A stretch of 64,000 nt of DNA from Oikopleura dioica (Eukaryota > Animalia > Chordata): contig OU015567.1 of NCBI GenBank assembly GCA_907165135.1, positions 9,114,001 to 9,178,000 on the forward strand. The letters are read 5' to 3'. Numbering within the stretch: position 1 is the stretch's first letter; the number at the start of each line of letters is the position of its first letter. Positions 47,977 to 52,779 of the stretch are shown here, piece after piece. Made by a program: the position numbers and the translations under genes. The notes under the pieces were generated by a model that saw only the letters and a program-made list of their open reading frames with translations, did not search any database and was not told the DNA's origin.

Positions 47977-49630
47977 TCAAACGAGACAGTAGCTATCTGG
48001 TACCAAAATAGCATAAGGATGGTTGTAGTTCAGGAGAGTAGGGTGTTCTTCCATGAGTTTTTCTCCTTCAATCGAGGTCCAATCTTCACTGAGGGTGTAT
48101 TTTTCGAAGTGATGCTCCTGGCTGCCTCCAAGTATCAAGAGCTCGTTAGGAGCAAGACGAACTAGTCGCGCCTGTGCTCGCGTTTTATAAACACCACTTA
48201 AGTAGCTCGATTAGTTATTAGAATTTAACTCTACGTTTACTCAACAACAGTTCCAATAGTAGTCCACTGGTCATCAAAAAGCCTCCAAATCTTTCCAGCT
48301 TGTCTGAAATTTAAAAGAATAGAAAAGAATTAGTGAAAGATGCATCTTACCCAGAAGTGTAACCAGGGAACAGGATGATACCCAAATCTCTGTCCGAAAC
48401 ATGTGTGAACTGGTAAGTGTACCCATCTGGCCACACTAGTGATTCTTCAACAGACCAGCCATATAAATTCCTAAATGTTTCAGGTTTGCAAAGTCTAAGA
48501 AGTGATAATTCTTACGTAAAGCGTTCAACAACCGGGTGGTATGAACCAGTATCGGCATCTCTTCCAGAGATCAAGATAGGATTCCCCTCGTATGATGCAA
48601 TCTGACCTCCTTGATATTGATGGCCTCGGTTTGGTGATTGACTGTCCCAAAATTTACTTCCATCGTAAGTTTGGACCTTCTTCATACCATCGTAGATCAT
48701 GATGTATGCTTGTGGGTCATCTTCGGAAGGTAGATAGCCGACAGAACCTGTATTGCAGTTATGGTTGATCTCTTCTCCTTCCGCTTTAACAATATCGCAA
48801 CCGTCGAGAATGTGCGGCCCGTAGATTGTCGGTCCACCGTCATTAGAGTACCGTCCGCCAAAAAGGAAGTTCATTCCTTTGTAAAGAACAGAACAGCCCT
48901 CATAAAAGAAATACTCTCGATTATCTGGACCGTTGTCATACCAAGAAACAGTGATGTCTTCAGTGTAGTGGTCGAAATTTGCAAGAGCGGGCACGTGAGC
49001 TGGGTATGTTCGATCAAGGATCAGTACGGATGTCAGCTGCTGCGGAGGAATAGTAGGGTTGACCGAGGGACACTCGTAGTTTGGACATGGACATCCATTA
49101 GGGCAGCCAGATTCACATGGACAGTTTTCGAAGTTTTCAAGGAAGTCCGTGTTGCACTAAAATTGTTGAGCATATTTTTTTTATAAATTAAGATTAAAAC
49201 CTGAATGACACAAGTAGAACTCCCAGAGCAATCATTTAGGCACTGGATAAGGTCCAACTCAAGCTGATTGAGACACGTTTTGTAATCTGGGTTCTCTCCA
49301 GGTTCAAAACAAACGTTGCAGATGACTGCAGCGCAACCATCACAGCCCTCGAAGCAATCAGCATGACAAGGACACCCATCGACACAGTCGAATCCTTGAC
49401 GAATGCAGCTATTCTCACAAGAAACATCTCCGGGTGCGCAAAAAGCTAAGCAAGATCGGACGCGCTCTGAGCACTCCGCTGAGCATAACTCTCCAAGATC
49501 TAAGTCCGTGCAGTTTTCATTGAGTCTCACTGCAGGAAAAGAGAACAAATTTCGATCGGCAACTTCCGAGTAAAGTTCCATAGCGTCAGGAATGAAAACA
49601 ACGCTCAAAAAGAATTTGCGCCGGTTTCAT
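47977..49630 (-). CDS. Secreted Cys-rich repeat + kelch-like beta-propeller protein (larvacean-type family)
   Basis: CPCHADCFEGCDGC and CPCESGCPNGCPCPNYEC motifs, then propeller blades (GCSVLYKGMNFLFGG; LLILGG). The signal peptide needs a 1-nt correction in a T-run near 49607-49611. Confidence 0.75.
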
Positions 49631-49741: not shown

Positions 49742-52089
49742 TCATTCTTCAGCTTTTTGGATTTCAATCGAGTAAGCTTGAGGCAGTAAATACCAAGTGT
49801 CTTTTTCCATTAAATCTTCGTTTGTCAGCGGAGCAAAAACGTTTGTTTTCTTATCATTGATTGCGCTCACGTTCGTTGTTGGATCAAAGAATCTGTTGTA
49901 TGCTTCCTTGTCGACAAAATATTCTTTTGTCATCGGAATACACAGTTTGATAGAATGTTGCGCCGTAGGCTGGTTGTTCTGAATGATGTATTCGTTGTTC
50001 TCGATTCGATCAAGGATCATTTGATGAAAGAAAACTCCGGAATGGCTTGAAGATCTGAATGCTCCAGTGATCGTAAGAGGTCGGACAAATGTGAAATTTT
50101 GATTCAAATAAACTAAAATTGAGTTTGATTGGAATGGACCCTAGGCCTTTTACCTTTTTCATAAACGAAACTACTGCCAGCAAGAAGATCCATACTCTTG
50201 AGGAAATCTCTAGAAATCAATCGACGCATCCACTCCCACCCGGCTTCATGAGCAAAAGTTTCCATCGCCATTCTGTCTAAGAGAGTCTCGATCTCAACCA
50301 ACTGAAATTTGTTTTCCGTCTCTGCTTTCTTCAAGCTGAGACCGGCCAAACTTCTCGGATAGACTCGCATAGTGATGAACTCCAAAATGAGTTGTATTGA
50401 AAACTTGTTCATGACTTTCTTCTTGAAGTACTCTTCTTCATTCTCAATAGCTTCTCGCAAAGCATGACGAATAAGAGTAGCGACTTTAGCAGGTTATTCT
50501 TTGATTGTGATAAAGAGAACTTATCTAGCTTCAAATTCAATTATTAAACCCCCTAACTGAAATCGGAACGCATAAGTTCGAGGTTTTCTGGTCGATAACA
50601 TCCTTTGTGACATTTGTAAAGTTAGTGTTCCTCGCTTTTGCGAGCCGATTTTTCAACTGGTTTACTTTGATCGATTTCGTCAAGTTTTCGTCCATCGTAT
50701 AAAGCTCCGAAGACTCTGGGAGAGAGATTACGGCAGATACAGCATTCATGTCATCATCGTTTACTTTCCATCGGTAGAATTGACCTCTGCCGAGCCAAGA
50801 TGCATTCGCTTTTTCCAAAAGTTTTTTGACATCTTCTTCTTCGTCCTCTTCGATTGGGTTGTAGATCAAGGTCCACGCAGTTTTCCAGTCGCAAAAGATG
50901 AAGAAAAAGAGTCGCTTGCTTATAGGAGCATCTTCTTTTCGCCGTCTTCTAGGGCCGCCGAGAATTTGATTGGTGCTGCAAAAACCTGGGGTCCCGGCTT
51001 CTATAAAGATGATCAGCTGACCGTTTTATTGGGATCAACTTACGTAAAGATTGAAAGTTCCGAAACTTGCTCCCTCGTCTTACGTAGCCCATTTTTCTGT
51101 AGCTTTCTCGACCGGAGAATTCTGTCATGACGCCAAAATCAATCCACTTAGGAATTTTTTTCTTCCCAAATAAAATAACATTCTCCAATTTTTGATCGCT
51201 ATGTTCCAGGTCAATTTTCCATAGATATTCTAAGCCGCCTTTGATTCCAAGAGCAATTCGTCTTCGTTCATCAATCGTAAGACTTTCGTTTTTCAAAGCA
51301 TTTCGTAGACTTTCAGCTCCTTCTTCCATGATTGTGATCCACCCAAGACAGTCCTGCATTTTCTTATCCGTCTTCAGAAAAATCTCAATATTCGCAAGAT
51401 GTTCGATGACATTTTCATGTCGGGGAACAATGTTTACACCGGTGTTTTCTTCGGTTCCAGCTTCAAAATCTTAAAACTCCAATCAATAATATGCGCGGGA
51501 AAAATCTTTACCTGATGACATATTTATTTCAAAGTGCATATCCTCGTCGGTAAAATTTCCGGCAAAAAGAAAAGGATCGAAACAATGAATCCGGAAGAGC
51601 GCATTGAGTTTGTCCGACTGTCTGCCTAAGATTGCTTCTCCGCCTTTATAAGATTAACCAATGCCTTTTTACAATTCAATATTCTACAATAGAATTTGAA
51701 TTGATAGAAAATGCCAATTTTAAGTTTTAAACTTTTCCTGAAGATAGAATGTTCTCATCAAAAAGCCATTTTCCAGTTTCTTCTCGAATATTCGACCGTT
51801 TGAACATCTTGCTCATCAAGTATTTGTTGCTCTTCAACAATTTGCATTGAAAATGCGTCGCTTGCCACGTATCCAAAACTTCATTTTTCCAGTTGAAAAT
51901 TCTCCCGACAATGCTCGAATCTTGAAACGAAAATTGACATTGAGACCACCACATAGCAAAATGATCGTCTTTGAAGGTCATTCGTTCGACAGACATGATT
52001 AGACGGCATTTGGGGACTCTGGTTGTCTCTCTTATCAATTTGGGTGTAATATCGTTTAGCCATTCCGCGATTGTCTCTTTACTTAGCAT
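49742..52089 (-). CDS. Divergent protein kinase-like domain fused to a C-terminal papain-like cysteine protease domain
   Basis: Kinase motifs SSG/GEA, HENVI, IMEEG, GLEYL, HSDQKLEN, IDFG, AGTPGF. C-terminal DQKTSNLC and HQMILDRIENNEYIIQN. Confidence 0.8.
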
Positions 52090-52136: not shown

Positions 52137-52779
52137 GATGATTTCAAAAAACTTTTTGTGGGGCCGGAAATCGTCAAAAATCTGTAAGTGCAGTTTTTTT
52201 CAGCTCGTCGAGACGAGTCGAATGATGGGTCTTACTCCTGATAACTGTCAGGATTTACCGGTTTACCGGCTGGTTACCGGAAAATACGTTGTCACCGGCC
52301 GTTTTTGTTCTAGAAGTGGTAAACAGATGATTGACCCAGGAAATTGTTCCTTATAGTCGGTTCTACTCTCGGCTGAAAGATGAGGCTCGTATCAATACTC
52401 TGAAGAGAGTTATCACAAAAACAGTAAATTTTACATGCATTTTGTTGTTGCTGCACGTTCCTGATTTTTTGTCCCATTTCTGCCATAAATAGTATTTTAG
52501 TGATAACTCTCTTCAGAGTATTGATACGAGCCTCATCTTTGAGCCGAGAGTAGAACCGACTATAAGGAACAATTTCCTGGGTCAGTCATCTGTTTACCAC
52601 TTCTAGAACAAAAACGGCCGGTGACAACGTATTTTCCGGTAACCAGCCGGTAAACCGGTAAATCCTGACAGTTATCAGGAGTAAGACCCATCATTCGACT
52701 CGTCTCGACGAGCTGAAAAAAACTGCACTTACAGATTTTTTACGATTTCCGGTCTCACAAAAAGTTTTTTGAAATCATC
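52137..52779. mobile_element. Near-perfect fold-back element (~280-bp TIRs, ~80-bp spacer)
   Basis: GATGATTTCAAAAAACTTTTTGTG... and ...CACAAAAAGTTTTTTGAAATCATC. Arms differ at only a handful of positions. Flanked by TTT on both sides. Confidence 0.92.

What the first reader, a model, noticed from the sequence alone, without database searches (positions are those of the whole stretch)
49742..52089. Kinase fused to a cryptic papain-like cysteine protease with exact catalytic spacing
Seen: after a divergent kinase domain (HSDQKLEN, DFG, AGTPGF; beta-3 Lys apparently replaced by Arg in ALFR; C-lobe shortened), the spliced frame continues into VIDQKTSNLCVPIS (Gln codon 50588-50590, Cys 50570-50572). 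It later reaches FFHQMILDRIENNEYIIQN (His 50024-50026, Asn 49976-49978). Known: papain (clan CA, family C1) has oxyanion Gln19 six residues before Cys25, and His159 sixteen residues before Asn175, in the pattern H-(hydrophobic strand)...Y.IIKN. Both spacings (+6, +16) are reproduced exactly here, and the Cys-His distance of roughly 140-150 aa is comparable. Inference: this is a cytosolic kinase/pseudokinase-protease fusion with no signal or pro-peptide. It could be a phosphorylation- or nucleotide-gated protease or deconjugase in signalling or innate immunity. I do not recognise the architecture from characterised proteins.
Basis: partly seen in the sequence, partly recalled or inferred. Interest (0 to 1): 0.82.

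Follow-up and report, generated by a model that had tools for sequence, protein, structure and literature searches.

The report
Kinase fused to papain-fold protease
This gene of the tunicate Oikopleura dioica is one conserved copy of a family of over a hundred genes, described in no paper I could find, that join an unusual protein kinase to a very divergent papain-type cysteine protease; in this copy the two halves of the protease are separated by an intron with no normal in-frame splice sites.

Summary
On the minus strand, 49742-52089, six exons encode an N-terminal domain, a protein-kinase domain (Pfam Pkinase above cut-off; HSDQKLEN and DFG kept, beta-3 Lys replaced by Arg) and a C-terminal domain. 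Gln, Cys, His and Asn sit at the stated codons.

New for this copy:
- Intron 1 is GA-AG.
- The intron right after the catalytic Cys has no in-frame GT-AG pair, and the public annotation (OKI2018_I69 g6531) calls only the 3' half.
- Two environmental alleles share this junction. Their exon differences are 22 synonymous against 1-2 non-synonymous, so both halves are under purifying selection.

No RNA reads covered the gene, so the splice is unresolved. Function is untested.

This scan had already noted the same family at eight or more other places in this genome.

The parts
51738..52089 (-). Exon 1: start ATG at 52089-52087; family-specific N-terminal alpha/beta domain, about 117 aa, ending ...ENILSS plus the first base of a Gly codon.
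   Evidence: ORF. Aligns to the N-termini of P0001, P0002, P0008 and paralogue ORFs. No Pfam match.
51644..51737 (-). Intron 1, 94 nt, non-canonical GA-AG. Only this pair gives ILSS-GGEAIL, as in paralogues (ISSGGEAIV).
   Evidence: Sequence; family alignment. GA-AG introns are frequent in O. dioica (PMC7072748).
51512..51643 (-). Exon 2: degenerate glycine loop (SSGGEAIL) and the beta-3 strand NALFRIH, with Arg (51593-51591) in the column of the invariant Lys.
   Evidence: Paralogues have AVRI, AVRV or AARL; the divergent copy in L029 has AAKA.
51461..51511 (-). Intron 2, 51 nt, GT-AG.
   Evidence: Sequence; frame confirmed by alignment to P0001.
51044..51460 (-). Exon 3: kinase core. HENVI (beta-4), catalytic loop HSDQKLEN (Asp 51197-51195), DFG (51140-51132), start of the activation loop.
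   Evidence: Pfam PF00069, E 2.1e-8, 34.3 bits against a cut-off of 31.7; translation.
51001..51043 (-). Intron 3, 43 nt, GT-AG (GTAAGT donor). Conserved in the environmental alleles.
50558..51000 (-). Exon 4: kinase C-lobe (AGTPGF, CDWKTAW), an acidic linker, then the start of the protease-like domain with Gln (50590-50588) and Cys (50572-50570) in DQKTSNLCVPIS. The 3' end is uncertain by 1-20 nt.
   Evidence: Translation; alignments. Against L033 and L034: 11 synonymous and 1-2 non-synonymous differences in 114 codons.
50484..50557 (-). Intron 4, about 73-74 nt, specific to this gene. GT(TAGG)...AG splicing shifts the frame. In-frame options are GG-AG, GA-AG, or a junction shifted by one base (TT-AG or GT-AA).
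   Evidence: It diverges 14.7% between alleles, against 3-4% in exons. It occurs once in the genome. The closest relative, P0030, and most paralogues have no intron here.
50154..50483 (-). Exon 5: helical lobe of the protease-like domain (ATLIRHALREAI..., YPRSLAGL, EAGWEW).
   Evidence: Against L034: 11 synonymous and 0 non-synonymous differences in 95 codons. The 69 nt upstream of the annotated Met are constrained like exon (2 differences; P=0.0015 against the intron rate).
50113..50153 (-). Intron 5, 41 nt, GT-AG.
   Evidence: The junction is identical to that in the annotated protein P0005 / CAG5112304.1.
49742..50112 (-). Exon 6: beta lobe with His (50026-50024) and Asn (49978-49976) in FFHQMILDRIENNEYIIQN, and the C-terminal strand WYLLPQAYSIEI. 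Stop at 49744-49742.
   Evidence: 100% identical to P0005 residues 88-209.

Best explanation
This is an Oikopleura dioica gene (OKI2018_I69, chr2) of a lineage-specific family with more than 100 copies. The encoded protein, about 680 aa, has three parts: an N-terminal alpha/beta domain, a divergent eukaryotic protein-kinase domain, and a C-terminal domain of about 270 aa with the papain-like (clan CA) fold.

Shown:
- The domain order.
- The kinase and papain-like folds, in close family members.
- Conservation of the catalytic-type residues.
- Purifying selection on both halves of this copy.

Inferred:
- The protein is cytosolic. No signal-peptide-like or pro-peptide-like sequence was seen by eye.
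- The C-terminal domain is an active cysteine peptidase or isopeptidase. Cys would sit on the N-terminus of the central helix, with Gln as oxyanion-hole residue and a His/Asn pair on a beta-hairpin.
- The kinase domain acts as a nucleotide-binding regulator or substrate-recruiting module rather than a standard kinase. It keeps the catalytic Asp, Asn and DFG but has Arg for the ATP-anchoring Lys.
- Exons 4 and 5 are joined in frame by an unusual, non-GT-AG splice of the kind common in this species.
For: Kinase:
- Pfam PF00069 scores above its cut-off on exon 3.
- The model of P0001:1-420 has pLDDT 83 and pTM 0.84. It matches PKR, IRAK4, PERK and DAPK at E about 1e-7.

Family:
- 116 matches to exon 6 and 106 to exon 5 in G000.
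- Single ORFs span kinase plus protease in paralogues: L026 635 aa, L025 404 aa.
- Annotated O. dioica proteins P0001, P0002 and P0031 belong to it.

Protease fold:
- The model of the uninterrupted paralogue L012:1492-2370 has pLDDT 81.4 and pTM 0.75. Cys58 lies at the start of helix 58-73, His204 in strand 201-212, and Asn220 directly after strand 215-219.
- The ESM Atlas shape search returns C39 clusters.
- The nearest named clusters by language-model features are PF00112 (0.90).

Residues:
- Q, C, H and N are conserved.
- A co-linear hhalign alignment to O. dioica cathepsins pairs Q-Q, C-C, H-H and N-N, though without significance.

Selection on this copy:
- Against two environmental alleles, exon 4 has 11 synonymous and 1-2 non-synonymous differences. 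Exon 5 has 11 and 0. Intron 4 has 11 differences in 75 sites.
- Exon 5 upstream of its first Met is constrained, and has no ATG of its own, so it needs an in-frame join.
Against: - No RNA evidence: reads from four RNA runs did not cover the gene. The runs are probably from another O. dioica lineage, so this is no test.
- No in-frame GT-AG pair exists at intron 4, and the public annotation calls only exon 5 (from Met24) plus exon 6 as a 209-aa protein.
- No sequence profile links the domain to a peptidase family at a significant level. Foldseek against PDB has no hit below E 0.06.
- I could not measure Cys-His-Asn distances, because model coordinates are not exposed.
- The fold was predicted for a paralogue, not for this copy. 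The joined exon model was deliberately not built.
- Arg for the beta-3 Lys normally abolishes kinase activity.
- A few copies have Ser for Cys (L027, P0008).
Confidence: 0.7

Rival explanations
1. In this copy the fusion is broken. Normal GT-AG splicing of intron 4 shifts the frame. The locus then makes a kinase protein that ends shortly after the catalytic Cys, plus, at most, a separate 209-aa protein holding only the His/Asn half (as annotated). No single chain has a complete protease active site.
For: - The only GT donor (TCA|GTTAGG, or GTAAAG in the environmental alleles) with the only usable AG gives a -1 frame.
- That frame stops at a TGA overlapping the ATG of the annotated CDS, as ATGA.
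- The annotation CAG5112304.1 starts at that ATG.
- Allele L034 also carries an 11-nt deletion in exon 5.
Against: - The 69 nt of exon 5 upstream of that ATG show 2 differences, both synonymous in the family frame and both non-synonymous in the shifted frame. This is far fewer than at the intron rate (P=0.0015).
- Those 69 nt encode the conserved helix that follows the catalytic Cys, and have no start codon of their own.
- The junction is shared by diverged alleles, yet both halves stay under strong purifying selection.
- GA-AG and other G*-AG introns are common in O. dioica, and intron 1 of this same gene is one.
Confidence: 0.2
2. The papain-fold domain is not a peptidase. It may be another thiol enzyme of the same fold (deubiquitinase-like isopeptidase, transglutaminase, acyltransferase, amidase) or a non-catalytic binding module. 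The kinase would then be the effector.
For: - The papain-like superfamily includes many non-peptidase activities, and includes kinase-fused EDR1 domains (PMC10318531).
- No sequence link to any peptidase family.
- Some copies have Ser for Cys or lack the Asn.
- ATG4, UfSP and viral deubiquitinase structures are among the matches.
Against: - The full Gln/Cys/His/Asn set, with C1-like spacing, is kept in 92-96% of the 28 genomic copies despite about 40% overall identity. This argues for catalysis, and for a C1-like oxyanion hole rather than the Cys-His-Asp of transglutaminases.
- The best structural and feature matches are C1 peptidases.
Confidence: 0.25
3. The Gln-x5-Cys and His-x15-Asn patterns are chance matches in an unrelated C-terminal region.
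For: Short spaced motifs are frequent by chance. No Pfam or PDB sequence hit.
Against: Family-wide conservation of exactly these residues. Papain-like fold in all 50 listed structural matches. Correct placement on secondary-structure elements.
Confidence: 0.02

Closest known systems
Papain-family (MEROPS C1A) peptidases: papain, cathepsins B, L and C, Der p 1, falcipains
   Different: No significant sequence or profile similarity: PF00112 finds only the ordinary cathepsins in this genome. No signal-peptide-like or I29 pro-region sequence seen. No Trp after the Asn (QNN or QNT instead of NSWG). A long helical insert. Fused behind a kinase. Presumably cytosolic.
C39 bacteriocin-processing peptidase domains (PCAT1, ComA) and other minimal clan CA domains (ATG4, UfSP, staphopain)
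   Different: They are bacterial or autophagy/UFM1-specific families with other motifs. There is no sequence match, and they lack the C1-like His+16 Asn spacing.
Plant EDR1/CTR1 Raf-like kinases (PF14381 EDR1 domain plus PF07714)
   Same: One chain combines a papain-like-superfamily domain with a protein kinase (PMC10318531).
   Different: Opposite order: the papain-like domain is N-terminal. The EDR1 domain is close to C71/C93 and transglutaminase-like families. No PF14381 match here. Unrelated lineage.
KSR-type pseudokinases (from my own knowledge)
   Same: Arg replaces the beta-3 (VAIK) Lys while the rest of the kinase core is recognisable.
   Different: No specific sequence relationship. 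Structural matches are spread over PKR, IRAK4, PERK, Myt1 and DAPK.
Other members of the same O. dioica family (P0001; P0031 = CBY31442.1; paralogues in L012, L023, L025, L026) and earlier notes of this scan
   Same: Same three-part architecture and motifs, at 35-50% identity.
   Different: This copy has its own intron directly after the catalytic Cys, with no in-frame canonical splice sites, and is split in the public annotation.

Membership tests
Clan CA (papain-like fold) cysteine peptidases | Two-lobe fold: helical lobe carrying the nucleophile, and a beta-barrel lobe | tested here: met
Clan CA (papain-like fold) cysteine peptidases | Catalytic Cys at the N-terminus of the central helix, preceding the catalytic His in sequence | tested here: met
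   Cys58 starts helix 58-73, and His204 lies in strand 201-212 of the model. The window residues align to these columns.
Clan CA (papain-like fold) cysteine peptidases | Cys, His and Asn/Asp side chains adjacent in three dimensions | tested here: inconclusive
   Model coordinates are not exposed, so no distances were measured. The only support is indirect: structural alignments start at model residue 51, which pairs with the residue before the oxyanion Gln of Der f 1, cathepsin B and cathepsin C (that numbering is from memory).
Papain family C1 (Pfam PF00112 / PF03051) | Significant match to the family profile | tested here: not met
   No Pfam hit for the window exons or paralogues. PF03051 appears only sub-threshold, in 3 of 73 members, best E 0.0036. 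A PF00112 scan of G000 finds only ordinary cathepsin genes. hhalign against O. dioica cathepsins gives E 0.18-0.53.
Papain family C1 (Pfam PF00112 / PF03051) | Gln-x5-Cys and His-x15-Asn catalytic spacing | tested here: met
Papain family C1 (Pfam PF00112 / PF03051) | Secretory signal peptide and inhibitory pro-region (C1A) | tested here: not met
   The sequence upstream of the domain is the N-terminal domain plus kinase. No hydrophobic N-terminal leader is visible in exon 1 (by inspection).
Papain family C1 (Pfam PF00112 / PF03051) | Aromatic Trp two residues after the Asn (N-S-W-G) | tested here: not met
   The window has IIQNNQP. The family consensus is QNT or QNS.
Eukaryotic protein kinase (PF00069) | Profile match and bilobal kinase fold | tested here: met
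   Exon 3 scores 34.3 bits against a cut-off of 31.7. The family member's model matches PKR, IRAK4 and others at E 1e-7.
Eukaryotic protein kinase (PF00069) | Catalytic loop HxDxKxxN and Mg-binding DFG | tested here: met
   HSDQKLEN and DFG in exon 3. Conserved in the family.
Eukaryotic protein kinase (PF00069) | Invariant beta-3 Lys (VAIK) that anchors ATP | tested here: not met
   The window has Arg (ALFR), as do nearly all paralogues. Only the divergent L029 copy has Lys in this column.
EDR1/CTR1-type papain-like domain plus kinase (PF14381) | Match to PF14381, with the papain-like domain N-terminal to the kinase | tested here: not met
   No PF14381 hit. The domain order here is kinase, then papain-like domain.

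The most novel reading that the evidence does not exclude
The family is an intracellular surveillance or genetic-conflict system peculiar to appendicularians. Each copy would be a one-chain switch. The Arg-substituted kinase module would sense a nucleotide, a phosphoprotein or a pathogen factor, and would release or aim a cysteine peptidase or isopeptidase effector. That would explain the expansion to more than 100 fast-diverging, clustered copies.

In this copy, expression of the complete enzyme would additionally depend on an unusual splice placed directly after the catalytic Cys.
Probability: 0.12. Interest if true: 0.85.

Novelty: new variant of a known kind. Interest (0 to 1): 0.55.

Why it matters
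If the C-terminal domain is active, this would be a new family of papain-fold cysteine peptidases, beyond the reach of the Pfam, PDB-sequence and hhalign searches run here, permanently tethered to a kinase-like module. That architecture has only a distant precedent, in plant EDR1/CTR1.

The family has expanded to over a hundred copies in a chordate with one of the most compact and fastest-evolving animal genomes. Such expansion is typical of immune or conflict genes, which are poorly known in appendicularians.

This copy also gives a clean natural test of non-canonical splicing in O. dioica. An intron sits next to the catalytic Cys, no canonical in-frame sites exist, and both flanking exons are under strong purifying selection. 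It also shows that the public annotation splits at least one family member because of this.

Tried and rejected
- RNA evidence. Read laying on three oligo-dT runs and one single-cell run labelled as the same species gave no read on the gene. There were only partial 90-95% matches to the upstream repeat. This is no test, because the runs probably come from another O. dioica lineage.
- Spliced junction in metagenomes. A pattern allowing 0-25 nt between the exon 4 end and the exon 5 start gave 0 matches in metagenome contigs.
- Sequence links for the C-terminal domain. Pfam on window exons and paralogues: nothing. PDB sequence search: nothing. Foldseek against PDB: best E 0.064, with only a scatter of clan CA entries among the weak rows. 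hhalign of the family profile against one cathepsin exon and against a small O. dioica cathepsin alignment: E 0.53 and 0.18, not significant, although the catalytic residues co-align.
- Assembly error as the cause of the frame problem. Rejected: two independent environmental contigs have the same junction geometry and intron length.
- Intron 4 as a repeat or introner copy. Rejected: it occurs once in the genome.
- The first 19 nt after TCA as coding, which a GA-AG donor further downstream would imply. Disfavoured: 3 of 19 sites differ between alleles, with 2 of the 3 changed codons non-synonymous, like the rest of the intron.
- Word-index protein search with a 635-aa paralogue ORF found only two O. 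dioica proteins. The exhaustive profile search was needed.
- Literature. No paper on this family was found.
- Left out on purpose. Each exon was used by reference, and uninterrupted paralogue ORFs and database proteins stood in for the whole domain.
Full report
**What is there**

The window has the compact, short-intron look of a small animal genome. The region 49742-52089 carries one gene on the minus strand.

Exact identity of a database protein to exons 5 and 6 identifies the genome. P0005 is CAG5112304.1, 'Oidioi.mRNA.OKI2018_I69.chr2.g6531.t1.cds', on a 16.16-Mb record. So this is Oikopleura dioica, Okinawa assembly OKI2018_I69, as earlier notes of this scan had said.

I built the gene model by hand. 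I checked it against a spliced family member (P0001) by tblastn and against two family alignments. It has six exons:
- E1, 52089-51738.
- E2, 51643-51512.
- E3, 51460-51044.
- E4, 51000 to about 50558.
- E5, 50483-50154.
- E6, 50112-49742.

Introns 2, 3 and 5 are GT-AG and 41-51 nt long. Intron 1 can only be GA-AG: this pair gives ILSS-GGEAIL, matching ISSGGEAIV in paralogues. That type is frequent in O. dioica (PMC7072748).

**Check of the observation**

- Gln 50590-50588.
- Cys 50572-50570.
- His 50026-50024.
- Asn 49978-49976.
- HSDQKLEN, DFG, AGTPGF and ALFR.

The spacings are Gln+6=Cys and His+16=Asn. Cys to His is about 144 residues.

**Kinase part**

Exon 3 alone passes the Pfam Pkinase cut-off (34.3 against 31.7 bits, E 2e-8).

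A family member's N-terminal 420 residues fold with pLDDT 83 and pTM 0.84. The model matches PKR, IRAK4, PERK, Myt1 and DAPK at E about 1e-7 with probability 1.00. No subfamily stands out.

In the family alignment:
- The catalytic loop HxDxKxxN and DFG are kept.
- The glycine loop is degenerate (S-x-G-G-E-A).
- The beta-3 Lys column holds Arg in this gene and in nearly all paralogues. One divergent paralogue (L029) has Lys there, which confirms the column.

The first 120-130 residues form a separate alpha/beta domain with no Pfam match.

**Protease-like part**

Exons 5 and 6 have 106 and 116 matches in the 64-Mb genome. Only the gene itself lies in this window.

Several paralogues carry the whole C-terminal domain in one uninterrupted ORF: L012 293 aa, L028, L023 and L025. 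One (L026) has a 635-aa ORF running from the N-terminus through the kinase into the Cys half. In the window gene itself, exon 4 contains both the kinase C-lobe and the Gln/Cys motif. The fusion therefore does not depend on any splice prediction.

Pfam and PDB sequence searches find nothing for the domain.

An exhaustive profile search of 1.84 billion representatives finds only 197 proteins at E <= 1e-3, mostly exon-sized fragments. The named hits seen are all from O. dioica. The rest come from marine metagenome assemblies.

Some metagenomic relatives are much more divergent (P0130, P0138, P0144, P0151). They have a more papain-like His motif (HAVxL...Y.FKNS), and they again sit directly downstream of a Pkinase ORF.

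*Fold.* I folded the intron-free paralogue L012:1492-2370 with a 73-row alignment. The result was pLDDT 81.4 and pTM 0.75. Cys58 opens helix 58-73, His204 lies in strand 201-212, and Asn220 lies just after strand 215-219.

*Structure searches:*
- Foldseek against PDB gave no significant hit (best E 0.064). The weak rows include staphopain, falcipain, xylellain, AvrPphB and a C39 domain among many unrelated entries.
- Several alignments begin at model residue 51. By the published numbering as I remember it, that pairs with the residue before the oxyanion Gln in Der f 1, cathepsin B and cathepsin C.
- The ESM Atlas shape search returns C39 clusters, TM 0.38-0.45 by the query.
- The nearest named clusters by language-model features are PF00112 clusters at 0.90.

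*Sequence-level tests against family C1:*
- Member-wise Pfam scanning gives only sub-threshold PF03051 hits in 3 of 73 members.
- hhalign against O. dioica's own cathepsins is not significant (E 0.18-0.53). It does align Q-Q, C-C, H-H and N-N co-linearly.
- A PF00112 scan of the whole genome finds only the ordinary cathepsins.

*Verdict on the domain.* It has a papain-like (clan CA) fold with a C1-like catalytic signature. It is not a demonstrable member of C1.

*Conservation in 28 genomic loci:*

| Residue | Kept |
|---|---|
| Gln | 24/26 |
| Cys | 24/25 (one Ser) |
| His | 27/28 |
| Asn | 26/28 |

The wider alignment shows the same for Q, C and H and a more variable Asn.

**The junction after the Cys**

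Between CVPIS and ATLIRHAL lies a stretch of about 74 nt that most paralogues lack, as does the closest relative P0030.

The only GT donor (TCA|GTTAGG) combined with the only usable AG (GCTAAAG|TC) puts exon 5 out of frame. That frame ends at a TGA overlapping the ATG (ATGA) where the public annotation starts its 209-aa protein.

In-frame alternatives are:
- GG-AG, adding 1 or 2 residues.
- GA-AG, adding 7 residues.
- A junction shifted by one base (TT-AG or GT-AA), which reproduces the family length exactly (CVPISVATLIRHA against CVPISVTTLLRHA).

Two independent environmental contigs are alleles of this gene: L033 from a Tara Oceans sample, and L034. Their exons differ from the window's at 3-4% of sites. 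They have the same junction geometry and intron length, so this is not an assembly error.

Between the window and these alleles:

| Region | Differences |
|---|---|
| Exon 4 (114 codons) | 11 synonymous, 1-2 non-synonymous |
| Exon 5 (95 codons, L034) | 11 synonymous, 0 non-synonymous |
| Intron 4 (75 sites) | 11 (14.7%) |
| First 19 nt after TCA | 3 (intron rate) |
| 69 nt of exon 5 upstream of its first Met | 2, both synonymous in the family frame |

For the last row, P = 0.0015 against the intron rate. Those 69 nt have no start codon of their own.

Both halves are therefore under purifying selection in the family frame, and the helix-coding start of exon 5 must be reached from exon 4. I conclude that an in-frame, non-canonical splice is the most likely reading (about 0.7). 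A split or truncated product is the main rival (about 0.2).

Other points on this junction:
- L034 also has an 11-nt deletion in exon 5. This may be a recent lesion or a low-coverage artefact.
- The intron is not a repeat.
- RNA reads from the available runs did not cover the gene and are no test.
- A scan for the spliced junction in metagenome contigs was blank.

**How it probably works**

*Shown:* the architecture, the folds, the conserved catalytic-type residues, and purifying selection.

*Inferred:*
- A cytosolic cysteine peptidase or isopeptidase using Cys/His with Gln and Asn as helpers.
- A kinase-like module tethered to it that keeps the phosphotransfer loop but lacks the ATP-anchoring Lys. 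It more likely acts as a nucleotide-binding regulator or substrate adaptor.
- The size, clustering and divergence of the family suggest a defence or conflict role. Nothing tests that.

**Comparison and novelty**

The closest known structures are C1A peptidases. The closest known architecture is plant EDR1/CTR1, where a papain-like-superfamily domain precedes a kinase (PMC10318531). Here the order is reversed and there is no sequence relation.

I found no paper on this family.

This scan had already flagged and followed up the same family at eight or more other places of this genome. My tests independently agree with those notes. What this report adds is the copy-specific junction problem, the population evidence for selection, the split public annotation, and the EDR1 precedent.

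Exons were used one by one by reference, and uninterrupted paralogue ORFs and database proteins stood in.

Noticed in passing
window 52137-52426 and 52490-52779: A 290-nt inverted repeat, 97% complementary, with a 63-nt loop. It starts 48 nt upstream of the gene's ATG. It is the only part of the stretch that RNA reads touched: partial 90-95% matches that run on into unlike sequence. So it belongs to a transcribed repeat family (foldback or MITE-like).
   Followed up: partly
window 49033-49608 (minus strand): A 191-aa cysteine-rich ORF starts about 130 nt downstream of this gene's stop, on the same strand. It has no Pfam match. It may be an operon neighbour in this operon-rich genome.
   Followed up: partly
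window 50413-50416 (minus strand, ATGA): If intron 4 is spliced GT-AG, the shifted upstream frame ends at a TGA that overlaps the ATG of the annotated 209-aa CDS (g6531).
   Followed up: partly
L034, aligned to window about 50237-50247: An environmental allele of this gene has an 11-nt deletion inside exon 5, in the EAGWEW motif. Differences downstream of it stay synonymous in the original frame. This is either a recent lesion or a low-coverage assembly artefact.
   Followed up: no
L029 (G000:C4:805000-809500): Tandem divergent family copies. One 596-aa ORF runs from the His/Asn half of one copy straight into the N-terminal and kinase part of the next. This kinase keeps Lys at the beta-3 position (YAAKAH).
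   Followed up: partly
L027:1666-3672 and P0008: These family copies have Ser in place of the catalytic Cys (FLSVPFSV, SNLSVPIS). They may be serine-nucleophile or inactive variants.
   Followed up: no
L030, L031, L032 (ENA metagenome contigs ERZ508537, ERZ27248569): Much more divergent relatives from an unidentified marine eukaryote. Their kinases look more canonical (HLDLKxSN, DFG, GTPGFASPE) and their His motif more papain-like. P0151 has two protease-like domains flanking a kinase C-lobe.
   Followed up: partly
It is unrelated to the finding and I did not examine it.
   Followed up: no
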